This document shows positions 6,801 through 62,106 of a stretch of DNA of 64,000 nt, piece by piece. Source of the DNA: Octopus sinensis (lineage: Eukaryota); NCBI RefSeq assembly GCF_006345805.1, contig NC_043020.1, positions 28,644,001-28,708,000 of the forward strand, in the 5' to 3' direction. Every line of letters starts with the position of its first letter. Position 1 is the stretch's first letter. Position numbers and translations under genes: made by a program. The notes under the pieces are model-generated. The model saw nothing but the letters and a program-made list of their open reading frames with translations, was not told the origin of the DNA and made no database searches.

Positions 6801-7208
6801 TACTTTTACTTGTTTCAATCATTTGACTGTGGCCATGCTGGAGCACCGCCTTTAGTCAAGAAAATTGACCCCGGGACTTATTCTTTGTAAGCCCAGTACT
6901 TATTCTATCGGTCTCTTTTGCCGAACCGCTAAGTGACAGGGACGTAAACACACCAGCATCGGTTGTTAAGCAATGCTAGGAGGACAAACACAGACACACA
7001 AACACACACACACATACACATATATATATATATATACATATATATGACGGGATTCTTTCAGTTTCCATCTACCAAATCCACTCACAAGGTATTGGTCGGC
7101 CCGGGGCTATAGCAGAAGACACTTGCCCAAGGTGCCACGCAGTGGGACTGAACCCGGAACCATGTAGTTTGTAAGCAAGCTACTTACCACACAGCCACTC
7201 CTGCGCCT
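6801..7208 (-). mobile_element. SINE family A copy
   Basis: same head, body and tail as 965-1418. Confidence 0.85.
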
Positions 7209-8916: not shown

Positions 8917-9027
8917 TGAACCTGTTATCGGTCGTTTGTTAAACAACATCTTGGACGGAGAAAAGAACGAATCAGTTATCGTCAACGGTCTTCTTGTCGT
9001 ACAGATTTTGCTTGATATCAAGAAAGT
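8917..9027 (+). CDS. PPP6R3: PPP6R3 exon (EPVIGRLLNNILDGEKNESVIVNGLLVVQILLDIKK)
   Basis: ttcag/gtaatt; phase 2-2 joins both neighbours; EKNES motif. Confidence 0.93.
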
Positions 9028-9931
9028 GTAATTTTATTTATATTTTCCACCTCCCACCCGACCCCCCACTTATCCTCTCACTCGAATCAGTTGCTTTGAC
9101 CATGTTTATTAACCTTGCATGTCTCAGGTGTCTCCACACCTGTAATAAACTAGGGGAAAATGTTGGACGACATATATCCATACACATGTGCATACTCTCT
9201 CTCACACACGCACACACACACATTCTTTTACTTGGTTTAGTCAGTTGACTGTGGCCATGCTGGAGCACCGCCTTCAGTCAAATAAATCAACCCCGAGACA
9301 TTCTTTGTAACTCTAGTACTTATTCTGTTGGTCTGTTTTGCCGAACTGCTAAGTTACAGGGACATGAACACACCAACATCGGTTGTCAAGCGATGGAGTG
9401 GGGTGACAAACACAAACACAAATATACCACACACACACACAGTCTTTATTCATGTATAAATTACACTATTTTGAAGTCGGTTTTACCTATAAAAAAAAAA
9501 AAGGGTGCTACTTGTGCTGAGGGCAAAGCTAAAACTATAGTTGCAGGTTCAGCTGCCCTCCACAGCACCATGGGCTTTTATCTTTTACTTATGGCCCCAG
9601 GGCTGACCAATGCCTTATGAGTGAATTTGGCAGATGGAAACTATGTTCTAGCCCATTGCATACACACACATTTGTCTCTTCGTGCCTTGCCTGTATTTGT
9701 CCCCTTTACCATGTGACAAATGGTGCTGGTTTTTCATATCCCTATAACCTAGCAGTTTGTCGAAAGAGACTGATAGAATAAATACCAAAACCTTTTTTTT
9801 AAAACTGAGGTCGATATGTTAGATGCATTTTTTTTTTTAAGGATATGATGTGAATTTTTAAAGCTGCTGTTTTTACCGTTTTTAGTGACTTTTGAAAATA
9901 CTTTATTGTATTCTCTTGTCTTTCTTTGTAG

Positions 9932-11703: not shown

Positions 11704-11829
11704 GATTTATATTTCAAATATATATGGAACAATTTCTTACATAGTCAAGTAGAGCAATGCATATATTTAATACTTAACAACTCACCTACAGAAATTGATA
11801 ACAGAAAGGAACATCCTCTTTTAGAACAA
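11704..11829 (+). CDS. PPP6R3: PPP6R3 exon (DLYFKYIWNNFLHSQVEQCI...HPLLEQ)
   Basis: ttcag/gtgagt; FKYxWNNFLHxQVE motif. Confidence 0.97.
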
Positions 11830-12810: not shown

Positions 12811-14489
12811 GTAAGTGACCTTCAAATATTTTCATTTTTACATTTTGCCTTTTGTTGTTATGTTTGCATGAAACATGGCAAGCTGGCTGAATCATTAGTG
12901 TATCAGACAAAATGCTTGGTGACATTTCTTCTGGCTCTTTATGTTCTGTGTTCAAATCCAACCAAAGCCAACTTTGTCTTTCATTAGTTTGGTCAGTAAA
13001 ATAAAGTACCATCCAAGTACGCAGAAATTACTGGCCTTAAACACTGCTGCAAGCTGGCATCCTGTTCAATTGAATGCTGTGATCTTGATCTTGATCATCA
13101 TCATCATCGTTTAACGTCCACTTTCCATGTTAGCATGGGTTGGACGATTTGACTGAGGTCTGGCGAACCAGACTCCAATCTTGATCTGGCAGAGTTTCTA
13201 CAGTTGGATGCCCTTCCTAATGCCAACCACTCCGAGAGTGTAGTGGGTGCTTTTACGTGCCACCAGCACGAGGGCCAGTTAGGTGGTAATGGTAACGATC
13301 ACGCTCGAATGGTCACTTTATGTTTATTGCTTGAGGAAAAAATTGCTCTCACAGACTGAGACTCATAAAAGAGAAGCATTTGTTACATAACTATATTATT
13401 GCAGAGATACTGTATGGTATTGTAAGCTCTCTGTCAGTGGTTCAGTGGTTCTGATCTATTTGCTAGCCTGGCTGTGTAGATACAGAGTTAACTTAGCAAC
13501 TCTGAGGTTTTGTGTTCTTTCCCTGCAGGGCACTGTGGGCAAAGCTTTGCTTCCATAGTGTTGAGGTAACCAATGCCTTGACCGTGGAATTGTTAAGCTG
13601 AAACTGTATGGTAGCTCAGTGTGTGAGACCATTTAGCATCGATGTTCCATGGGTTGGGTGGTTTGACAGGATAGGATGCTTTGGCATGGATTTTGCAACT
13701 GGATGCCCTTCTAAACGCCAGTTACTTTACAGCTTGTACTGGTTTTTTTTTATGTCACGTGGTCGCCATGCAACTTGCAAGAATACGAACCCAGAGAGGG
13801 CAAGTTTATGTTAGGAGCTGAGGGATAAAGTAAAAGAGAAAAGGGCCAGAACAGGTTTTCTGCTGTAGAGGAACTACATGACTACTCGCATTTTAGAAAA
13901 GAGAGTGGAAGTGATCAGGTGGAGCTGGAGATAGTGATGATGAGGGTATTGGCATGGACCTTCAGGGTATGGGGTGGGTAGTAATGAGTAGAGGAGTAGG
14001 GGATGCCTGATAGTGCAGAGCACTGTGTGTGTGTGTGTGTGAAATTGTCTGTTTGCCCTGACAGTGTGTGATAGTCATAAGTGAGTATTACTGTCACAAA
14101 AGCAGTGTCATGCATTTCCAATGTTCTGTGAGAACATGTCTGGCTAAATATTATCCTTGCATGAAAACACATAAGAGGAAGGGCATTTGGCCATAGAAGC
14201 TCTGCCTTAAATATACTCCATACGACTCCTGCAGTCATGGAAAAGTGGACATTAGATGATAATGATGATGATGTTTAATCGCTCCATGATTTTGGATATT
14301 ATATGGAATAAGTGATACAGATATTTGGCTTCACAGAAGAGAATCATTGGGTTTAGGTGCATGAAACTGTGTTAAGTCATAGACTCTTTCCAACTCAGAG
14401 CAGCATGGAAAATGACATGAAATGAGAGAAAAATGAAAATGTTGAAATCTCAAAATGATACATGTTATTTTTTAATGTTTTTTTTGCAG

Positions 14490-15772: not shown

Positions 15773-16165
15773 TACTCTTTTACTTGTTTCAGTCATTTGA
15801 CTGTGGCCATGCTGGAGCACCGCCTTTAGTCGAGCAGATCGACCCCAGGACATGTTCTTTGTAAGCCTAGTACTTATTCTATCGGTCTCTTTTGCCAAAC
15901 CGCTAAGTTACAGGGATGTAAACACACCGGCATCGGTTGTCAAGCGATGTTGGGGGGACAAACACAGACACACAAACATATACACACACACACACATACA
16001 TATATACGATGGGCTTCTTTCAGTTTCCATCTACCAAATCCACTCACAAGGCTTTGGTCTGCCTGAGGCTATAGTAGAAGACACTTACCCAAGGTGCCAC
16101 ACAGTGGGACTGAACCAGGAACCATGTGGTTCGTAAGTAAGCTACTTACCACACAGCAACTCCTA
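15773..16165 (-). mobile_element. SINE family A copy
   Basis: same head, body and tail as 965-1418. Confidence 0.85.
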
Positions 16166-16253: not shown

Positions 16254-16343
16254 GTTCAAGGTCATCCGCTCCATTCAAGTAGTGAAGACGATGACACTGA
16301 CTTCAGAGATTTGCCTTTTAACCAAGATGCAGTCATGCAACAA
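16254..16343 (+). CDS. PPP6R3: PPP6R3 exon (VQGHPLHSSSEDDDTDFRDLPFNQDAVMQQ)
   Basis: tgtag/gtaagt; HSSSxD motif; phase 0-0. Confidence 0.94.
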
Positions 16344-17518
16344 GTAAGTCCACCTCTTTCTGCTTTTTTCCGTTTCCTTTTTAGACCCAAATATTCCGAG
16401 TAATTGCGGTTTCCGTCTCTTTGCTTTAAACTTCTGTTGAAATTGAAACACAATTCTTCAGATGGAAATGTTTAACCCCCACCCGCTCCTTATAACTCTT
16501 ATATTCAGTTAAATTCTTTTTCATTGTGGTGGTCGTGACAGGATATCTTGGAGGAACTTAAATGAGGCGGGTATAAAGATGTGTAAACTAAGTGCTATAC
16601 TGGATTGAGTATTGGGATTGGTATGAACGACTAAAACTGCTTGAAGGTCATATCTCAATATGATCACAGTCCAGATACTGAAACCTTCATGGCTAATTTA
16701 TGGGTAGTAAATTTCCTGTTTTTTTTTTTTTTTTTTTTTTTTTTTAACTATTAAGGTAAAAAATCCTTGCTTTCCTGTATGAGGGGGACACCTTTGTAAT
16801 TGATGTGAAACCTTGATAAGGAGACACGAGGACTTTCACACACACACATAATGGACTTTTAAATTCTGCCTACCAAATCTTCTTACAAAGCTTTGGTCAG
16901 CCTGAGGCTGTAGCTGAAAATTCTTGCCCAAAGTGTCTTGCAATGGGATTGAACCTAAAACCACATAGATGGGAAACAAGCTAATTAACCACACAGGCAT
17001 GCCTCATGTGGTTTTCTGCCTTATTTAACTGTTTCTTGTTTGATTACAGTTTATTCAATATTTCGTATTGTATTAAAACTGTTATGTATTCTATTCTCAA
17101 GTAAGTAATGTTTTAATAATGCATATATTTTGTACAGAAAATTTTTAGAGAAATGTTGATCAACTTTCCCAACTGCTTTAAATCTTATCCATTAGAGGTG
17201 TTTCGTTGTGAATGTCTTAAAAATCTGCTTTGGAGTTAGCTTATTCCGTTACTCAGGTTTATGGAATTGTGAAGGAAATTCTTTGAAGAACTATGTGCAG
17301 TGAATGGATGGTTGGCTCTGCCTAAGTGCCAGGCTTTAATACTTTGCTGTATTTATGTGTTTATGTCTAGAATACAGTTCTCCCCAGAGTCAGCATTGCC
17401 TTTCTACATTCAGACAGAAACCCTAATTATTTATAATTATTCTCACATTAGTTTTCTCATCTTCTCTCTTCTAACCACTTTCTTCTGATGCTTGTCATCG
17501 ACATTGCTTTTTTTTCAG

Positions 17519-17536
17519 AAACCCAACTATTCTCAA
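17519..17536 (+). CDS. PPP6R3: Candidate 18-nt alternative microexon of PPP6R3 (KPNYSQ)
   Basis: long pyrimidine tract ending ttcag, then AAACCCAACTATTCTCAA, then gtaagt; in frame in a phase-0 intron; no transcript evidence available. Confidence 0.65.
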
Positions 17537-20500
17537 GTAAGTAGTGGACACTTGTCTCACCACGTTAATGGTCTTGCTGCCCTCAGATCTGTCTAATGTC
17601 ATTTTATTATTGCTGGTAAAGTGGAGGGCAGGCTATATTATCAATTATCCTAGTCTCATAGCTTGTACTTTCCACATGACTCTCAACCATCATCACTCAT
17701 GTCACTGTGTGTTCACTTACTTCCAAACCTCCTCCCCAGCTCCCTTATTTTTTTCCATATTCAGTTGTTGCACTAGTTACTGTTTTCGTTTTGACTGATT
17801 TTAGTGTTTAGTAAATTGGGGTGAATCTGTGTTGTCCCACACAGTCCCGTGCACACGAAGGTTTATAAAGAGGTCTGTATACGAAAATATATTTCATTCT
17901 TTACAGCATATTACTCATATTTAGACAGGCCCCATGATAATTATATATATATGTATGTATGAGTGTGTGTGTGTGTGTGTGTATACACACAACACACACA
18001 CATATGCATATATAAAGAAAACAAGATGACAAAGGAATAAACAATTATGAACTTCATTAGCTTACAGCTGTTTCTGCTATAAGATGCAGTGGACTCAGGT
18101 GAGTGCCTGAGTAACACCTTAATGCTTCATCAGAGCCTCTAAAATATGGCTTAGTGGTTAGAGTATTCAGCTCACGATGGTAAGGTTGTGGATTTAATAC
18201 CCAATAATGTGTTGTGTCCTTGAGCAAGACACTTCATATTGCTCCAGTCTACGGAACTGGTAAAATGAGTAGTGCTGTACCTGTAATTCAAAGGGGGCCA
18301 GCCTTGTCACATTCTTTGTCACACTGAATCTCTCTCTGACAACGACATTAAGGACACATGTTTCTGTGGAGTGCTCAGCCACTTGCACGTTAATTTCACG
18401 AGCAGGCTTTTCCGTTGATCGGATCAGCTGGGACCCTTGTCCCCGTAACTGACAGAGTGCCAGTTATACAATCAATAAGGGGCCAAGCTGGTAGAATCAT
18501 GCGTTGGACGAAGGGCTTAGCAGCATTCCTTCCAACCCTTTTGGTTCTAAGTTCAAATACTGCCAAGGCCGACTTTGCCTTTCACCCTTTTGGGATCAAT
18601 AAAATAAAAGTACCAGTCTTGTACTGGGGTCAGTGTAATCAATCCCTCGTTCAAATCACTGGTCTTAGGTACTGATTAGAAAGAATTGTTGTTATAAGGC
18701 CAAGTATTTTGGCAAACCAAGGCAAAGCAAGAACTGTGCCACCAGTTTTGAGTTTATATAGCTTCTTCCCAGCAGGCATAAGTGTAATTCTCATTTGGTA
18801 TTGTGATTGTATCATGGAAGTTACTGGTAATGAAAATTTATTGTATTGTTGATATAGTTCTGAAAATAATTAGATGAAATATGGAATGTCTTGCAGTATA
18901 ATTATTAAGCTGTTTATCTGTATAAAAATTTGTTCAATGTTGATGACATTAATATATTCACAATATAGTTTAGATTTTGCTGTCAAATACTTTATAATGC
19001 CAAATCATTTTGGCAAGCCAGAGGGTAACAGCTCAGCCACCAGTTTTAGTGATATCTTCAACATCAGCTTGAAATCTAGTGACCATCTGCGGAATGTAGT
19101 ATAGAGCTGTATTTGAGGTTTTATGATTCATGCTGTTATTTTTACAAGACTAAATACGTTTTTTTTTAAATAACCAACTTAATGTCAATGCATCACCGAA
19201 AGTTAAATTACTGTGGTATTTATCTAGAGATAACATCTCTTATGGACATGCTGTGTTTAAAAAACATAATAGTGGAGGGGAATATAAATCACCCCAGCAG
19301 TGGCTAGTGGGAACACCAGGTGCATTTTGGCCTTGTTGGGTTTTATCAATGGCAAGTACTCACACCCAGGGACATGCTTAGAGGAGATTTGTCACATCCA
19401 ATATCTAGGAAACAATGAATAAACATTCACTAGTATTGCATTCTTGCTGGCCCTACTGGAGCAATTTTCATATCTCTGGATGAATCCTGCAGTAAAGTGC
19501 CTTTCAACATTGTATATACTTTAAGTATGATACATAGAGGGCTATTTTAATTTAATGCTGCTTCTATTATATATGAAATGTTGTTTTGAAGCATATTTTA
19601 TAGGCATTAGATATGCATATCATTAAATGATTACAGTAGCAAAATTTACCTACTTAAAATACATTAACAATATTTGATCATGATTTAGCTTTTTTGTAAG
19701 TGTTTTTTTCATACTTTTGAAAGTTAAAGCTCAGGGGTTTGTTAATGATGATAAATAGAGGGAAATACTTAAATAGGGTCTGTTGTAACTTTGTGCCCTG
19801 CAAGAATCTAATGGCTTGGTTTATTGATAACACTGGGGGGCTGGTTTGTACCTATAAAATGCAGTGCAAGGAAAACTATTCTTTGTCCTGCGCTACATTC
19901 ATAACCATGGCCCATGGGGCTGTTCCAGACAATTTGTCTGGAAGCTGGTTATGTTGCTGGATCTATGACGTGTTCGAGAGTTGCTTCATGCATTGTCGAG
20001 TCTTGTTAGACAAAGCAGCTTGCTCTGCCACTCTAGAAAATACATCTGAAAAGAAGTGGTTAAGGCAGGCCTGAGGAAGCTGAACATATTTTTCAGATCT
20101 GTGCAACATGGGGCTTGCATTAAAAAAGACCAAAAACAAAAAAAAAAACAGTCATAAAAACCAATACAGCTCATTAGTTTATGAAGGTCTTGTATAGGTC
20201 TTTATATTTGCTGGCATTTCCAGCTGATTTGGGATCATAGATGGGGTGTGCTGTTTTCTAGAGAGAGAGAAATAGAGGTTACTTGTTTTATTGAGAGAGG
20301 GAAATAAGATAGAAATGTGGTCAGGCTGGAGCATCTTTTGGATGTATCATAACGTTTATTGTAGCCAGGTGTTTATTTCAAGAACAAAGGCTGCATGACC
20401 TTGTTCCATCAAATTACAAACTGTTTGGATAAAGAGGAAATATAGAAGATTGCTAAGCTAACGACATGGCCACAGTTTAAAAATTTGCTCTAGTCAAATA

Positions 20501-20556
20501 TTAAGATGTACTCTTGAGACTATCAGTGTCATGTTACTAATAGAATGTTATACAAC

Positions 20557-20608
<52 letters not shown>

Positions 20609-21395
20609 CACGTTTTGTAATTTTAATTAGTCTGACCTTAAATGCATCTATTGCTCACAAGTAACGGTATAACTTAGTGATAACATAGTATTTTTTAGTG
20701 TTATCTTTTGACAACAGCAGGTCTTATTGTTAATATAAATTGTTTAAATGTTTGAGGTATTGTATCGAGGTTTTTTAACAACTGATTTTTTTTTCTCTCT
20801 CTTCCATGCCTAGTTGACCTGCATGTATTTTGTCTTTTAATGTCTGACATGCACTATAAACTAGATATTTGAAAATAAATTTGTTCCTCTGAAAAACGTT
20901 ACATGTGTACATATATATGTGTGTGTGTACATACATATATAAATGCATATATACATTCATGCATGTATATATTTATATATATACATGTGTGTTTATATAT
21001 ATATAAATATCATGTAATTTTCTTTTGTCTGCATGTATTTATATTTTAAGATGTATTAATTTGTATTTCTCTGATGTTCCTCTTAACCCACAATTACAGT
21101 ATTTTTTCCCCCTTTTTTTTTCGTACTTTAATCTGCATCAGTTAAATCTGCTGTATTCTGTTTAAAATTTTGGATATTTTACAGTAATTTTAATTTTGAG
21201 AGTTTAGAAACTGCTTCTGTAATTTGCCTTATACAGGAAGTGCTTAAAGCATTAAATTGGATGAAATTAATTATCACTGATTGAAAGACATTGTCACTGG
21301 TTTCTATGAGTTTTACTGAAATTGAGGTTTGCTTCTCTCAATTAGTTTCTTCTATTTTATTCAACTTTTTTCACATTTGTTTTCGTTATCAACAG

Positions 21396-21490
21396 GCCTT
21401 CTCTGATTACCAACTACAGATGACATCTAATTTCATTGATACATTTGGCTTCAATGAACATGATTTTGCTGACCAAGATGGCAAAATTGA
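21396..21490 (+). CDS. PPP6R3: PPP6R3 exon ([31 protein letters not shown])
   Basis: aacag/gtgagt; AFSDYQxQxMTSNFIDxFGFN motif. Confidence 0.97.
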
Positions 21491-21954: not shown

Positions 21955-22015
21955 CACCACATTTAATGAGAAGATCTCAAGCATTGACTTCAATATAAGG
22001 GCTGATGAAGATAGT
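21955..22015 (+). CDS. PPP6R3: PPP6R3 exon (TTFNEKISSIDFNIRADEDS)
   Basis: tgcag/gtaagt; phase 2-0 joins neighbours. Confidence 0.9.
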
Positions 22016-23492: not shown

Positions 23493-23623
23493 AATGTCAA
23501 CTGACAGTCTCGGTTCTGATGATCAGGAGGAGGAAGAGGACAACACCGACAGTGATGAAGAATTAGACTCTCCAAAGTGCATTCTACAACAGCCTCAAGA
23601 GAAGATGGATGTAGATGTAGAAG
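23493..23623 (+). CDS. PPP6R3: PPP6R3 acidic exon (MSTDSLGSDDQEEEEDNTDSDEE...DVE)
   Basis: tgtag/gtcagt; phase 2-1 consistent with neighbours. Confidence 0.9.
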
Positions 23624-24398: not shown

Positions 24399-25532
24399 GT
24401 AAGGACAAATGTGTTGCCTTGTTTGACTATGTTGCCGTAATACTTTGAACGAATGTTCTTAAAATCTTCATCACTTTTTCTTTCAAACTACTCTTCCTTG
24501 TTGAATGGGGGCAGCTTGTTTTGTTACTTAAGCTTTTCCTAACACCAACTGTTTTACAATGTGTAAGAGACCCCCTTTGGTCATGAATGACTATGGGATT
24601 GCACCTAGAAAGTTACCCTCTGAGGCACAAGTCCAGGCAAGGTTGTTTATGAAAGACCAGCAGTCACCCATGCACACCAAATTCCCCTCTCCATGCCACC
24701 AATGTTATCCAAGGGAATGGCAAAGGGGCCGATAGAGCTTGACACCAGTGATTTGAGTCACCCGAAGACAAGTCACCGTTATTTTCTTTTCTTCTTTTAC
24801 ACTTTCTAAGTCTTCGAGTATAAATCCTCCCAAATCAGAATCACTGAAGCTTCATGGGTAAATACAAAAGTATCAATCTGCAGTTCATGTGTTGTTGAAA
24901 ATTTCACAGTATTTACATTTAGAATCCAAATGTAGGAACATTGAGAAATATATAAGTCTTTATTAACGACATAAGTCCAACTGGGGTGGCCATATATCAC
25001 CTCTATTGCAAGACACGTGTTTATGTCCATCTAGCATAAAGCCACCTCCTTCAGTACACTCAGCTGATGGGTCTTGACTTCCAAGCTGCTTGGTGACCCC
25101 ACTAATGCTGGTGCTGTGTAAGAAAGCACCTGGCATGCTCTGTAAGGTGTCTGGTATTGAGATGGGTATTCGGCTGTTGAAACCATGCCCCAGCAAACAT
25201 TGGAACGAAATACAGTCCTCTGGCACATTGGCCCTATCAGAGCATCCAACCCATGCCAGCATGGAAAATGAACATTAAACAATAATGACGATGATGATAT
25301 CTTTAATAAAGACTTACGGCTTCTTAATATTTTTCAACATTTGTTCTTCCTGCATCTACTCAGAAGGCATCAGACAACTCAGAGAAGACAATTGCCCAAT
25401 GTGCCATGCAGTGGGGATTGAACCCAAAGTGATGTGGTTGCAGAGTGAACTTCTTAACCCCACAGCCATGTTTAAACCTGATGTATTGACCAATTCCTGT
25501 CATCCAATAATGTAATTCTTTTTTTTTTCCAG

Positions 25533-25606
25533 AATTCCTCGGAGTAGCTCTCCTATAGCTATGGATACTGGTGACACTGTGTCTAGTTCAGGCTGTGAAG
25601 ATAAGA
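25533..25606 (+). CDS. PPP6R3: PPP6R3 exon (IPRSSSPIAMDTGDTVSSSGCEDK)
   Basis: tccag/gtacgt; RSSSPxxMxT motif; phase 2-1. Confidence 0.9.
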
Positions 25607-25635
25607 GTACGTATCCATTTATATAATTGGAATAA

Positions 25636-29869: not shown

Positions 29870-29911
29870 GTTACATTTTGAAACTGATGAAGAGCTTTAT
29901 CAGAATTTTAA
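29870..29911 (+). CDS. PPP6R3: Candidate 42-nt cassette exon of PPP6R3 (RLHFETDEELYQNF)
   Basis: pyrimidine tract + ataaag acceptor, gtgagt donor; open in the required phase 2-2. Confidence 0.5.
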
Positions 29912-30369: not shown

Positions 30370-30933
30370 GTAATTCACTGCTAATATTTTGGGTTTGTGG
30401 TGGGGTGAGCAGAAACTGTAACACAGTTTTAATCCCCGATTTCTTTGTTTTGATAATGTTTTTGAGAAATTCTTCAATATTGCATTTTTACTTACATCTC
30501 CCAAAATACAGAGCCTTTTGTGCCTACTCAATTTGGTTTCAAGAAGAAAAGAAAAGAGAAAAAAAAACATTGAGGTTGATCTGACTGTAGTCAGTAAGTG
30601 CAAAGTGTTCTAAAACGCCTCTAATAGCTTAGGATTTGTGACATGATGATTTTAAATTTGAAAAAAACCCCAAAAAAACGAACACATGATATTCATCATC
30701 ATCGTTTAACGTCCGTTCTCCATGCTAGCATGGGTTGGACGGTTCGACCGGGGTCTGGGAAGCCAGGGGCTGCACCAGGCTCCAGTCTGATCTGGCAATG
30801 TTTCTACAACTGGATGTCCTTCCTAACGCCAACCACTCCGCGAGTGTAGTGGGTGCTTTTTACGTGACACCGGCACCTGTGCCAGGGGTGTCTGGCATTG
30901 GCCACGATCGGTTGGTGCTTTTGACATGCCACC

Positions 30934-32340
30934 GACACGGAAGCCAGTCAAGGCGGCACTGGCATCGGCCACGTTCGGATGGTGCTTTTTATGTGCCACC
31001 GGCATGGAAGCCAGTGGGGGCGGCGCTGGCATCGGCCACGTTTGGATGGTGCTTTTTATGTGCCACCGGCACAGAAGCCAGTCGAGGCGGCACTGGCATC
31101 GGCCACGTTCGGATGGTGCTTTTTATGTGCCACCGGCACAGAAGCCAGTCGAGGCGGCGCTGGCATCGGTCACGTTTGGATGGTGCTTTTTATGTGCCAC
31201 CGGCACAGAAGCCAGTCGAGGCGGAACTGGCATCGGCCACGTTCGGATGGTGCTTTTTATGTGCCACCGGCACAGAAGCCAGTCGGGGCGGCGCTGGCAT
31301 CGGCCACGTTTGGATGGTGCTTTTTATGTGCCACCAGCACAGAAGCCAGTCGAGGCGGCGCTGGCATTGGCCACGTTCGGATGGGGCCTTTTATGTGCCA
31401 CCGGCACGGAAGCCAGTCGGGGCGGCGCTGGCATCGGCCACGTTCGGATGGTGCTTTTTATGTGCCACCAGCACAGAAGCCAGTCGAGGCGGCGCTGGCA
31501 TCGGCCATGTTTGGATGGTGCTTTTTATGTGCCACCAGCACAGACGCCAGTCGAGGCGGCACTGGCATCGGCCACGTTCGGATGGTGCTTTTTATGTGCC
31601 ACCGGCACAGAAGCCAGTCGAGGCGGCGCTGGCATCGGCCACGTTTGGATGGTGCTTTTTATGTGCCACCAGCACAGAAGCCAGTCGAGGCGGCGCTGGC
31701 ATTGGCCACGTTCGGATGGGGCCTTTTATGTGCCACCGGCACGGAAGCCATTCGGGGCGGCGCTGGCATCGGCTACGTTCGGATGGTGCTTTTTATGTGC
31801 CACCGGCACAGAAGCCAGTCGAGGCGGCGCTGGCATCGGCCACGTTTGGATGGTGCTTTTTATGTGCCACCAGCACAGAAGCCAGTCGGGGCGGCGCTGG
31901 CATCGGCCACGTTCGGATGGTGCTTTTTATGTGCCACCGGCACAGAAGCCAGTCGAGGCGGCACTGGCATCGGCCACGTTCGGATGGTGCTTTTTATGTG
32001 CCACCAGCACAGAAGCCAGTCGAGGCGGCGCTGGCATCGGCCACGTTCGGATGGTGCTTTTTATGTGCCACCAGCACAGAAGCCAGTCGGGGCGGCGCTG
32101 GCATCGGCCACGTTCGGATGGTGCTTTTTATGTGCCACCAGCACAGAAGCCAGTCGAGGCGGCACTGGCATCGGCCACGTTCGGATGGTGCTTTTTATGT
32201 GCCACCGGCACAGAAGCCAGTCGAGGCGGCACTGGCATCGGCCACGTTCGGATGGTGCTTTTTATGTGCCACCAGCACAGAAGCCAGTCGGGGCGGCGCT
32301 GGCATCGGCCACGTTCGGATGGTGCTTTTTATGTGCCACC
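30934..32340. repeat. Minisatellite, 21 tandem copies of a 67-bp GC-rich unit derived from the interior of repeat family B
   Basis: unit GGCACAGAAGCCAGTCGAGGCGGCGCTGGCATCGGCCACGTTCGGATGGTGCTTTTTATGTGCCACC; 1407 bp = 21 x 67; explains the three overlapping 500+ aa ORFs. Confidence 0.95.
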
Positions 32341-33358
32341 AGCACAGGTATCACAACTACTATTTCCATTGATATTTATTTCGATGTTCATGTACTTGAC
32401 TCAACAGGTCTCCTCAAGCACAGCGGGATGTTCTGGAATCCAAGGTACTTTGAATGGGCAGGGGCTATGCGGGGCTGGGACATTGATAAGGAATATTAAA
32501 AACTTTCAAAAAAAAAACTTTTTAAAATGAATGTGCTGCTTTGTGCATGTCGGTGTGCTTTTGATGTGCAACTGTGCTGGTGAATGCATGTGGCAATATC
32601 TTTTAATGTTTTCCAATTTCAATGTGCAAACCTCTTCATCATGTGCAAGTCTTTTTGTTTCTAATAATTAAAAATTGTTCTCTCTATATTCATCTGCAAT
32701 GATAAACAAGTGCTCCAAAGGTCACTCTCTCTCCATTAATCATTGGCCTTTGGCATAGATACCTGTAGCTTTCCATTCCTTTATTTTCGGTAAGATTGCT
32801 TTTTTGCCTTGTTGTTACCAATTGCACACCTTCCTGCATTTTAGTACTCGTTCAGAGTCTGTATCAAATACGCATGACAAAGGCTGCTGCCATTTCTTTT
32901 TCTTTCCACAACTTAAAACGGTTGTCTTCATGTACTTTGATCTAGATATATATTTTACATTTGCTTTATACATTTATATATTTCTTTATTGCCCACAAGG
33001 GGCCAAACACAGAGGGGACAAACAAGGACAGACAAAGGGATTAAGTCGATTACATTGACCCAAGTGCGAAACTGGTACTTTATTTATTGACCCCGAAAGG
33101 ATGAAAGGCAAAGTCGACTTCAGCGGGATTTGAACTCAGAACGTAACGACAGACGAAATACTGCTAAGCATTTATAATTGAACCTTAAAGGCTATCACTA
33201 CACTTCTCTCTTGGTGTAGATATTGACTGCTTTTTGTATTTTCAGTCATCCTCATCATTTAACATCCTTTTTGTCTCCCCCTCATGATGCTGGCATGGGT
33301 TTCACAGTTTGACAGGAACCGACAAGCCAGGGAGCTGTGCTGAGCACCACTGTCTGTT

Positions 33359-36285: not shown

Positions 36286-36369
36286 TATAAAACACAGAGT
36301 ATTGCGGGGCCAGCTACGGCCGGTTTAGTTGCTAAAGGTTTAAACCTGTCCTGTCTTTCTGTTTTGCAG

Positions 36370-36442
36370 GTCTCAAGCGATTGAAGCCATGGAAAAATAC
36401 GAAAAGGCTATAACAGCATCAATGAAGAATGGACCAGTTTGA
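36370..36442 (+). CDS. PPP6R3: PPP6R3 last coding exon (SQAIEAMEKYEKAITASMKNGPV*)
   Basis: tgcag acceptor in phase 2; ends NGPV-stop like the recalled vertebrate PPP6R3 C-terminus. Confidence 0.9.
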
Positions 36443-61712: not shown

Positions 61713-62106
61713 ATTCTCTTTACTCTTTTACTTGTTTCAGTCATTTGACTGCGGCCATGCTGGAGCACCACCTTTAGTCGAGCAACTCTACCCCGGGACT
61801 TATTCTTTTGTAAGCCCAGTACTTATTCTATCAGTCTCTTTCGCTGAACCGCTAAGTAATGGGGACATAAACACACCAGCATCGGTTGTCAAGCAATGCT
61901 AGGGGGACAAACACACACACACACACACATATATATATACATATATACGACAGGCTTCTTTCAGTTTCTGTCTACCAAATTCACTCACAAGGCATTGGTC
62001 GGCCCGGGGCTATAGCAGAAGACATTTGCCCAAGATGCCACGCAGTGGGACTGAACCCAGAACCATGTGGTTGGTTAGCAAGCTACTTACCACACAGCCA
62101 CTCCTG
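61713..62106 (-). mobile_element. SINE family A copy
   Basis: same head, body and tail as 965-1418. Confidence 0.85.

What the first reader, a model, noticed from the sequence alone, without database searches (positions are those of the whole stretch)
17440..17545. Candidate 18-nt neural-type microexon (KPNYSQ) hidden in a 5-kb PPP6R3 intron
Seen: ...ttctaac (branch-like)...pyrimidine tract...tgatgcttg...cattgcttttttttcag, then AAACCCAACTATTCTCAA (17519-17536), then gtaagt. It is in frame in the phase-0 intron, turning ...MQQ-AFSDY into MQQ-KPNYSQ-AFSDY. Established: bilaterian neural microexons regulated by SRRM3/4-type eMIC domains have long pyrimidine tracts and UGC motifs just upstream of the 3' splice site. 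Inference: a neuron-specific 6-aa insert next to a conserved SAPS motif of a PP6 scaffold, too short for most gene predictors.
Basis: partly seen in the sequence, partly recalled or inferred. Interest (0 to 1): 0.75.

Follow-up and report, generated by a model that had tools for sequence, protein, structure and literature searches.

The report
Annotated, conserved octopus PPP6R3 microexon
The 18-base stretch is a genuine, alternatively spliced mini-exon of the octopus PP6-phosphatase scaffold gene, conserved across octopuses and cuttlefish. It is already present in public gene models, and its proposed brain-specific use remains untested.

Summary

It is a real cassette exon, but it is not hidden. 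RefSeq isoforms X1, X2 and X4 of both Octopus sinensis and O. bimaculoides contain MQQ-KPNYSQ-AFSDY. Isoform X3 equals X1 minus exactly these six residues. The window's exons match O. sinensis X1.

The exon is 18/18 identical in Argonauta hians. An unannotated ortholog (KPSYSQ, intact splice sites) sits in the same intron of the cuttlefish Acanthosepion pharaonis, inside otherwise unalignable intron sequence. A gastropod, a bivalve, four unidentified invertebrates and a vertebrate have nothing comparable in that intron.

The upstream intron has the published SRRM3/4 (eMIC)-type architecture: a 65-nt AG-free zone, a CUAAC branch site at -45, UCUCUC, two UGC motifs and U8. Neural specificity and eMIC dependence could not be tested here.

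The known vertebrate PPP6R3 neural microexon (VLKSY, also 18 nt) lies elsewhere in the gene, so the two are not orthologous. A tick carries a different 24-nt microexon at the same junction.

Verdict: ordinary and already annotated, with modest evolutionary interest.

The parts
16254..16343 (+). Upstream constitutive exon (VQGHPLHSSSEDDDTDFRDLPFNQDAVMQQ; residues 509-538 of O. sinensis isoform X1), ending in phase 0 with donor CAA|gtaagt
   Evidence: tblastn gives 100% identity to XP_029650348.1.
17452..17516 (+). 65-nt AG-exclusion zone upstream of the microexon 3' splice site
   Evidence: Only 10.8% of 111 strong decoy acceptors have a zone of at least 60 nt. The zone is 57-150 nt in the other four species examined.
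17464..17475 (+). CU-rich element (ctctct) followed by the branch-site consensus ttCTAAC (CTAAC at 17471-17475, branch A at 17474, position -45)
   Evidence: CTAAY is present at only 1 of 17 constitutive acceptors of this gene and 4.5% of decoys. It is conserved in O. bimaculoides but not in Argonauta or the cuttlefish.
17489..17491 (+). UGC motif at -30
   Evidence: Every cephalopod examined has a UGC between -30 and -40.
17505..17515 (+). Second UGC (17505-17507, position -14) followed by a U8 tract (17508-17515)
   Evidence: This second UGC is present only in the two Octopus species.
17519..17536 (+). 18-nt cassette microexon AAACCCAACTATTCTCAA = KPNYSQ (residues 539-544 of isoform X1), phase 0 on both sides
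   Evidence: Present in RefSeq isoforms X1, X2 and X4 and absent from X3 in two Octopus species. 18/18 identical in Argonauta hians and O. bimaculoides. 14/18 identical (KPSYSQ) in Acanthosepion pharaonis.
17537..17551 (+). 5' splice site GTAAGT plus a conserved downstream intronic block (GTAAGTAGTGGACAC)
   Evidence: 15/15 identical in Argonauta and 14/15 in the cuttlefish, while the flanking intron drops to 28-56% identity.
21396..21490 (+). Downstream constitutive exon ([31 protein letters not shown]...), encoding the near-invariant motif
   Evidence: The motif is conserved from vertebrates to molluscs and ticks.

Best explanation
Window 17519-17536 is a genuine, already annotated, alternatively spliced 18-nt cassette microexon of the octopus PPP6R3 gene. 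The gene belongs to the SAPS family of PP6 regulatory subunits, and the window matches Octopus sinensis.

Inclusion joins 16343 to 17519 and 17536 to 21396, inserting KPNYSQ at residues 539-544. Skipping joins 16343 to 21396 and gives MQQ-AFSDY, the form seen in all non-cephalopod homologs recovered apart from the tick forms described below. The exon and its first 15 downstream intron bases are under purifying selection across coleoid cephalopods.

Shown: the exon exists in annotated isoforms, is alternative, and is conserved.

Inferred, at roughly 50% likelihood: recognition of this very short exon depends on an upstream intronic enhancer of the SRRM3/4 (Srrm234 eMIC) type, namely a distal CUAAC branch site, UCUC, UGC and poly-U in a long AG-free zone. 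On that reading, inclusion would be enriched in neurons.

Inferred at the protein level: the six polar residues, which include Tyr and Ser, extend a predicted disordered acidic linker (residues about 511-542). They sit directly at the N-terminal edge of the invariant [20 protein letters not shown] segment. This would alter the spacing, flanking context or phosphorylation of a probable binding motif in the part of the protein C-terminal to the SAPS domain.
For: Annotation:
- O. sinensis isoforms X1, X2 and X4 and O. bimaculoides X1, X2 and X4 contain MQQKPNYSQAFSDY, while X3 lacks it.
- X3 equals X1 minus KPNYSQ exactly, in both species.
- The window's exons are 100% identical to O. sinensis X1 residues 47-984.

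Conservation:
- The exon is 18/18 identical in Argonauta hians and O. bimaculoides genomic DNA.
- The cuttlefish's orthologous 2.26-kb intron holds tttttttcag|AAACCATCCTATTCCCAA|gtaagtaatggacac (KPSYSQ). It is the only strong in-frame candidate there and the only significant blastn match (43 nt, 88% identity, E = 7e-9).
- Identity against Argonauta is 100% in the exon and in the first 15 intron bases, against 38-56% in the flanks.

Controls:
- The same scan ranks the annotated exon first in O. bimaculoides, Argonauta and the tick.
- It finds nothing in Haliotis, Mytilus, four metagenomic invertebrates or a vertebrate.

Cis-architecture:
- The features match published eMIC-exon features.
- All 54 Logan transcript contigs of the cuttlefish cluster, and one octopod transcript, are the skipped form. 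This is compatible with tissue-restricted inclusion.

Structure:
- The AlphaFold2 model gives a confident SAPS repeat domain up to about residue 510 and pLDDT below 50 for residues 512-546.
- It predicts a low-confidence helix at 543-561.

Prior: neural exons recur in the same gene families across bilaterians, and vertebrate PPP6R3 has a neural microexon.
Against: - No tissue-resolved RNA-seq, junction reads or SRRM perturbation data were reachable, so neural enrichment and eMIC dependence rest on sequence resemblance alone.
- Three of four RefSeq isoforms include the exon, which could equally mean broad inclusion.
- The CTAAC branch site and the second UGC are not conserved outside Octopus.
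- The Argonauta annotation may have been projected from Octopus models rather than supported by its own RNA.
- No cuttlefish transcript containing the exon was seen.
- The function of the AFSDYQ...FGFN segment is unknown, and the structural model is low-confidence there.
Confidence: 0.85

Rival explanations
1. The exon is real but not neuron-specific. It would be a broadly included or otherwise regulated cassette (developmental, muscle or gonad), recognised through its good core splice sites without an eMIC-type factor.
For: - Three of four RefSeq isoforms in each Octopus species include it.
- Its splice-site scores are typical of constitutive exons of the gene.
- UGC within 40 nt occurs at 51% of strong decoy acceptors.
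- Published work notes that UGC is neither necessary nor sufficient.
Against: - The combination of a 65-nt AG-free zone, a distal CUAAC, UCUC and two UGC motifs was found at 0 of 111 decoys and none of 17 constitutive acceptors.
- Assembled transcripts from unselected public runs are all skipped forms.
- The gene's vertebrate ortholog has a neural microexon, and neural exons recur in the same genes.
Confidence: 0.4
2. It is a chance pseudo-exon: a fortuitous AG...GTAAGT pair in a long intron that is never spliced.
For: By summed splice score alone, 0.22 such in-frame candidates are expected per gene of this size. One other candidate, at 13529-13534, reaches the same sum.
Against: - It is annotated in seven protein models of three octopod species.
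- It is 18/18 identical in Argonauta despite 40-55% identity in the flanking intron.
- It is conserved with intact splice sites and an open frame in the cuttlefish.
Confidence: 0.02
3. It is the ortholog of the known vertebrate PPP6R3 neural microexon.
For: It is in the same gene family, has the same length (18 nt), and both insert six residues.
Against: - The vertebrate exon (aGTGTTGAAGTCCTACcg, VLKSY) lies in the C-terminal tail between ...TETAVFK and EEEK.... It is listed as '23' under transcript ENSDART00000181722.1 and is not phase 0.
- Vertebrate transcript and genome contigs show SSLQQ|AFSDYQ with no candidate in that intron.
- No eMIC-like candidate exists in the window's C-terminal introns.
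Confidence: 0.01

Closest known systems
Vertebrate PPP6R3 neural microexon (VastDB DreEX0057914; zebrafish chr25:10,609,193-10,609,210 and mouse chr19:3,459,747-3,459,764)
   Same: It is in the same gene family and is also 18 nt. Its peptide is 100% conserved between zebrafish and mouse. Its inclusion rises from 0 to 0.81 across the sampled series in Figure 1 source data. Removing it in zebrafish gives a mild brain-size and acoustic-response phenotype.
   Different: It lies in a different intron (the C-terminal tail rather than the QQ|AFSDY junction), in a different phase, and encodes an unrelated peptide (VLKSY versus KPNYSQ). The relationship is recurrence within the same gene ('type II convergence' as defined), not orthology.
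SRRM3/4 (Srrm234 eMIC-domain)-dependent neural microexons of bilaterians
   Same: Shared features are a length of at most 27 nt, frame preservation, a strong 5' splice site, a long AG-exclusion zone, a distal strong branch site, a UCUC...UGC bipartite element between branch site and AG, and high conservation of the exon and proximal intron.
   Different: Neural-specific inclusion and dependence on the eMIC factor define the class, and neither was testable here. Membership is therefore a hypothesis only.
Tick PPP6R3 24-nt microexon (Haemaphysalis longicornis KAH9380471.1; L022 11595-11618, VFPRSVQQ)
   Same: It occupies the same phase-0 intron between ...ALQQ and AFSDYQ.... It has the same kind of acceptor: ttctaac at -43, a CU-rich tract, cUGCag and an AG-free zone of at least 150 nt. 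It is present in a transcript assembly, P0026.
   Different: It is 24 nt rather than 18 nt, with no convincing sequence similarity. A related chelicerate-like transcript (P0017) and all molluscs outside cephalopods lack any insert. Independent origin is more likely than common descent.

Membership tests
Alternatively spliced cassette microexon | Length of at most about 27-30 nt, flanked by AG and GT, and frame-preserving | tested here: met
   18 nt, cag|...|gtaagt, phase 0 on both sides, no stop codon.
Alternatively spliced cassette microexon | Both inclusion and skipping products exist | tested here: met
   Isoform X1 versus X3 differ by exactly KPNYSQ in O. sinensis and O. bimaculoides. A skipped Logan transcript, P0153, also exists. 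This evidence comes from gene models and transcript assemblies; no reads were inspected.
Alternatively spliced cassette microexon | Evolutionary conservation of the exon and its splice sites | tested here: met
   18/18 identical in Argonauta and O. bimaculoides. 14/18 in the cuttlefish with both splice sites and the frame intact. The flanking intron has diverged.
eMIC (SRRM3/4, Srrm234)-dependent neural microexon | UGC between branch site and AG, a long AG-exclusion zone, and a distal branch site and pyrimidine tract | tested here: met
   AG-free zone of 65 nt, CTAAC at -45, UCUCUC, UGC at -30 and -14, and U8. At least one UGC at -30 to -40 and an AG-free zone of 57-131 nt occur in all four cephalopods.
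eMIC (SRRM3/4, Srrm234)-dependent neural microexon | Inclusion enriched in neural tissue | not testable with these tools
   No tissue-resolved octopus RNA-seq was reachable. The supplements of the one preprint that analyses O. bimaculoides tissues are not held.
eMIC (SRRM3/4, Srrm234)-dependent neural microexon | Inclusion depends on the eMIC-domain splicing factor | not testable with these tools
   This needs a perturbation or minigene experiment.
Ortholog of the vertebrate PPP6R3 neural microexon | Same intron position and phase in the orthologous gene | tested here: not met
   The vertebrate exon lies between ...TETAVFK and EEEK... in the C-terminal tail and is out of phase 0. The octopus exon lies between MQQ and AFSDY.
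SAPS-family PP6 regulatory subunit (host gene) | SAPS domain (Pfam PF04499) and full-length similarity to PPP6R3 | tested here: met
   PF04499 at E = 1.5e-96. 99-100% identity to O. sinensis PPP6R3 models.

The most novel reading that the evidence does not exclude
The phase-0 junction just before the invariant AFSDYQ...FGFN segment of SAPS/PPP6R proteins may be a recurrent insertion point for eMIC-type neural microexons. Coleoid cephalopods would have gained an 18-nt exon (KP[N/S]YSQ) and ticks a 24-nt exon (VFPRSVQQ) there, independently or from a very old shared exon. Vertebrates tune the same scaffold through a different 18-nt neural microexon. This would be convergent neuron-specific retuning of PP6 holoenzymes in three phyla.
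Probability: 0.3. Interest if true: 0.55.

Novelty: already known. Interest (0 to 1): 0.3.

Why it matters
The exon itself adds nothing new to the public record, because it is already in RefSeq models.

Three points found here were not found in the papers searched here:
- The exon is conserved across coleoid cephalopods, including an unannotated copy in the cuttlefish genome.
- It is not the ortholog of the vertebrate PPP6R3 neural microexon, whose removal changes zebrafish brain size.
- A tick has a different microexon at exactly the same junction.

If inclusion proves to be neural, PPP6R3 would be a clean example of recurrent neural microexon evolution in one gene across distant phyla. It would also point to the uncharacterised AFSDYQ...FGFN segment as a functionally important interaction site of PP6 scaffolds.

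Tried and rejected
- A short (68-aa) protein query spanning the junction found only one unrelated metagenomic fragment. A 193-aa query found none of the cephalopod proteins either. The word index is too sparse for short queries, and only the 683-aa spliced query retrieved the cephalopod proteins.
- A PDB sequence search gave no PPP6R3 entry covering this region.
- The supplements of the eLife version held only behavioural data. The bioRxiv version supplied the vertebrate microexon sequence.
- The supplements of the 2026 preprint that includes O. bimaculoides are not held.
- The metagenome scan returned PPP6R loci of unidentified invertebrates and vertebrates. These served as negative controls but included no cephalopods.
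- Orthology with the vertebrate microexon was considered and rejected.
- A recursive-splicing site was considered and rejected, because the exon starts AAACCC and so does not regenerate a 5' splice site after CAA.
- Origin from a repeat or transposon was considered and rejected, at least within the window, since there are no other copies.
- I looked for RBFOX GCAUG motifs nearby and found none.
- My first exon chain was wrong in several places. It mis-set the start of the exon at 11704-11829 and the 23188 and 26279 acceptors, and it missed exons at 21955-22015 and about 25531-25611, the 29870-29911 cassette, and the last exon at about 36368-36439. These were corrected against the RefSeq protein.
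Full report
**1. Observation**

- The upstream exon ends ...GAT GCA GTC ATG CAA CAA at 16343, followed by gtaagt.
- The downstream exon starts GCC TTC TCT GAT TAC at 21396, after a cag.
- The intron is 5,052 nt long and phase 0.
- Inside it, cag|AAACCCAACTATTCTCAA|gtaagt occupies 17519-17536 and reads KPNYSQ in frame.

Upstream of the exon lie these features:
- ttCTAAC at 17469-17475, with the branch A at position -45.
- A CU-rich run.
- TGC at positions -30 and -14.
- A T8 tract.
- A 65-nt stretch (17452-17516) with no AG.

**2. Host gene**

I spliced the open segments on the + strand. The product hits Pfam SAPS (PF04499) at E = 1.5e-96.

tblastn later showed that the window's exons are 100% identical to residues 47-984 of XP_029650348.1, Octopus sinensis PPP6R3 isoform X1. 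They differ at several residues from O. bimaculoides. The partial O. vulgaris model shows the same O. sinensis-type residues, so the window is of O. sinensis/O. vulgaris type. Only the first coding exon lies outside the window.

A review states that PPP6R1-3 arose by the whole-genome duplications at the origin of vertebrates. It reports a single SAPS gene in flies, worms and fission yeast.

**3. Is it more than chance, from sequence alone?**

I scored splice sites with a generic matrix.
- The candidate's acceptor (4.0) and donor (5.1) fall inside the range of 17 constitutive exons of this gene (4.6 +/- 2.2 and 3.8 +/- 2.8).
- Among 12,027 AG...GT pairs 3-30 nt apart on both strands, only the candidate meets both of its own scores. 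Four others match its summed score.
- Markov simulations of the gene's 22 kb of introns give 0.057 in-frame, stop-free candidates per gene by the both-scores criterion, and 0.22 by the summed score.

Splice strength alone is therefore only suggestive. The acceptor architecture is much rarer.
- Of 7,389 AG dinucleotides in the window, two meet a relaxed composite of AG-free zone, CTAAY, TGC and pyrimidine run. Only the candidate meets the strict version.
- None of 111 strong decoy acceptors combines the three features.
- The feature list comes from published descriptions of eMIC-dependent exons. The thresholds, however, were chosen after I had seen the site.
- The region has no other copy in the window.

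**4. Decisive evidence: the annotation**

A 683-aa spliced query retrieved cephalopod PPP6R3 proteins, and the cluster members were then listed. Reading the sequences gives the following:

| Species | Contains MQQ-KPNYSQ-AFSDY | Lacks it |
|---|---|---|
| O. sinensis | X1 (XP_029650348.1, 984 aa), X2 (XP_029650350.1), X4 (XP_029650352.1) | X3 (XP_029650351.1, 978 aa) |
| O. bimaculoides | X1 (XP_014789872.1, 975 aa), X2, X4 | X3 |
| Argonauta hians | GAB1609180.1 | |

In both Octopus species, X3 is X1 minus exactly KPNYSQ, residues 539-544. The exon is therefore an annotated alternative cassette and is not hidden.

It is missing from:
- the O. vulgaris model CAI9739956.1;
- a Logan octopod transcript, P0153;
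- both Acanthosepion pharaonis models;
- all 54 Logan transcript contigs of the cuttlefish cluster.

**5. Conservation at the DNA level**

- Genomic loci of Argonauta (L016) and O. bimaculoides (L017) carry the identical 18 nt with cag and gtaagt.
- In the cuttlefish locus (L021), the orthologous 2,256-nt intron contains tttttttcag|AAACCATCCTATTCCCAA|gtaagtaatggacac at 23496-23513. This encodes KPSYSQ and differs by two synonymous changes plus Asn to Ser.
- That site is the only strong in-frame candidate in the cuttlefish intron (sum 9.9; the next best is -1.8). It is also the only significant blastn match to the octopus region (43 nt, 88% identity, E = 7e-9).
- O. sinensis against Argonauta is 100% identical in the exon and in intron bases +1 to +15, but 38-56% in the remaining flanks.
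- Against the cuttlefish the figures are 78%, 93% and 28-60%.
- Every cephalopod keeps at least one UGC between -30 and -40 and a long AG-free zone. The CTAAC and the second UGC are specific to Octopus.

**6. Controls and taxonomic limits**

The phase-0 intron between ...QQ and AFSDY is ancient. It is present in a vertebrate contig (L008), four unidentified metagenomic invertebrates (L002, L010, L011 with its near-duplicate L012, L014), Haliotis rubra, Mytilus edulis and a tick.

| Locus | Best in-frame scan score |
|---|---|
| O. sinensis (window) | 9.0 (the annotated exon) |
| O. bimaculoides | 9.0 (the annotated exon) |
| Argonauta hians | 10.5 (the annotated exon) |
| Tick | 13.6 (the annotated exon) |
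| Vertebrate contig L008 | 4.8 |
| Four metagenomic invertebrates | at most 1.6 |
| Haliotis rubra | 1.6 |
| Mytilus edulis | -6.9 |

None of 13 Mytilus isoforms, and none of the other non-cephalopod mollusc or brachiopod proteins whose junction could be read, has an insert. Two metatranscriptome contigs show the skipped junction: L004 (an invertebrate) and L007 (vertebrate PPP6R3-like). The exon therefore appears to be a coleoid innovation. Squids and Nautilus could not be examined.

**7. Relation to the known vertebrate microexon**

Vertebrate PPP6R3 has a conserved, developmentally regulated neural microexon. Deleting it in zebrafish reduces the size of the thalamus and pretectum and alters acoustic responses.

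Its sequence is aGTGTTGAAATCGTATcg in zebrafish and aGTGTTGAAGTCCTACcg in mouse, encoding VLKSY. Its context is ...AKTETAVFK[R VLKSY R]EEEKQ.... That places it in the C-terminal tail, out of phase 0, and unrelated to KPNYSQ. The mouse RT-PCR primers of an independent study translate to GMKETL and DAACKDA. From my own recollection of the human protein, which I could not verify here, these flank the same site.

The octopus exon is therefore not its ortholog. The pair fits 'type II convergence', meaning different introns of orthologous genes. A 2026 preprint that includes O. bimaculoides reports this pattern as common for neural exons.

**8. A parallel at the same junction**

Haemaphysalis longicornis KAH9380471.1 and a Logan transcript (P0026) read ...[18 protein letters not shown].

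In the tick genome this is a separate 24-nt exon (L022 11595-11618) inside a 4.7-kb intron. It has ttctaac at -43, a CU-rich tract, cTGCag and gtgaga. A related chelicerate-like transcript (P0017) lacks it. I could not show homology with the cephalopod exon, and independent origin seems more likely.

**9. How it probably works**

*Splicing (inferred).* An 18-nt exon is too short for ordinary exon definition. The strong 5' splice site (GTAAGTA), the distal consensus branch site, and the UCUC...UGC element in a long AG-free zone match the bipartite enhancer that recruits SRRM3/4, SRSF11 and U2AF2 to microexons. The invariant 15 nt downstream of the exon may be a further enhancer.

*Protein (inferred).* AlphaFold2, run with a 32-sequence alignment, models a confident helical repeat SAPS domain up to about residue 510. 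Residues 512-546 have pLDDT below 50. A low-confidence helix is predicted at 543-561, covering [17 protein letters not shown]. The insert thus lengthens an acidic, serine-rich disordered linker directly at the edge of a near-invariant segment that looks like a binding motif. [quoted passage not shown] Which partner uses this particular segment is unknown.

**10. What remains open**

Tissue specificity and factor dependence are untested. I put the probabilities as follows:
- about 0.95 that the exon is spliced in vivo;
- about 0.55 that inclusion is neural-enriched;
- about 0.45 that it depends on the eMIC factor.

The exclusively skipped transcript assemblies argue against constitutive inclusion. 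Their tissues of origin are unknown, so this is weak evidence.

**11. Verdict**

The exon is already in public annotation, so its novelty is low. The coleoid-wide conservation, the unannotated cuttlefish copy and the tick parallel are modest new observations.

Noticed in passing
L022 11595-11618 (Haemaphysalis longicornis, GCA_013339765.2): A 24-nt microexon, GTTTTCCCGAGGTCAGTGCAGCAG (VFPRSVQQ), sits in the same phase-0 intron (ALQQ|AFSDY) as the octopus exon. It has ttctaac, a CU-rich tract and cTGCag upstream. It is annotated in KAH9380471.1 and present in a Logan transcript (P0026).
   Followed up: partly
L021 23496-23513 (Acanthosepion pharaonis, GCA_903632075.3): An ortholog of the octopus microexon (AAACCATCCTATTCCCAA, KPSYSQ) with intact splice sites. 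It is absent from both deposited protein models and from all 54 Logan transcript contigs of that cluster.
   Followed up: yes
window 29870-29911: A 42-nt alternative cassette (ag|GTTACATTTTGAAACTGATGAAGAGCTTTATCAGAATTTTAA|gtgagt). It encodes RLHFETDEELYQNF(N) in isoforms X1-X3 and is skipped in X4 (replaced by S) in both Octopus species. Its acceptor is purine-rich and weak.
   Followed up: partly
window about 9020-9030 (end of exon 8917-9027): Isoform X2 in both Octopus species lacks two residues (KV, residues 279-280) at this exon junction. I could not find a canonical GT/AG pair that explains a 6-nt difference.
   Followed up: partly
window 30892-32347: A tandem array of a 67-bp unit, 21.7 copies at 93% identity. 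It is open in all three + frames for more than 500 codons. It lies in the long intron between the 42-nt cassette and the penultimate coding exon.
   Followed up: partly
window 13529-13534: A second splice-like mini-candidate in the same gene (ctgcag|GGCACT|gtgggc). The acceptor is very strong (9.2) but the donor is weak (0.0). No annotated isoform includes it.
   Followed up: no
proteins P0014 and P0040 (unidentified species; alignment A2): These homologs lack exactly QAFSDY at the start of the conserved exon (...DTAVQ-QMQQMT...). An alternative acceptor 18 nt inside the AFSDY exon would produce this.
   Followed up: no
L007, L008, L009 (metagenome collections): Vertebrate PPP6R3 sequences (one transcript and two genomic contigs) are present in environmental metagenome and metatranscriptome assemblies, presumably from host or eDNA carry-over. 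L004 is an invertebrate PPP6R transcript.
   Followed up: partly
window, many sites (e.g. 1114-1323, 6948-7109, 15922-16071, 61860-62012): Numerous copies of a SINE-like repeat joined to (TA/TG)n microsatellites on both strands. They give recurring pseudo-ORFs in translation, such as ...HQHRLSSNAR...THTH...YIYIY...STKSTHKALVGPGL.
   Followed up: no
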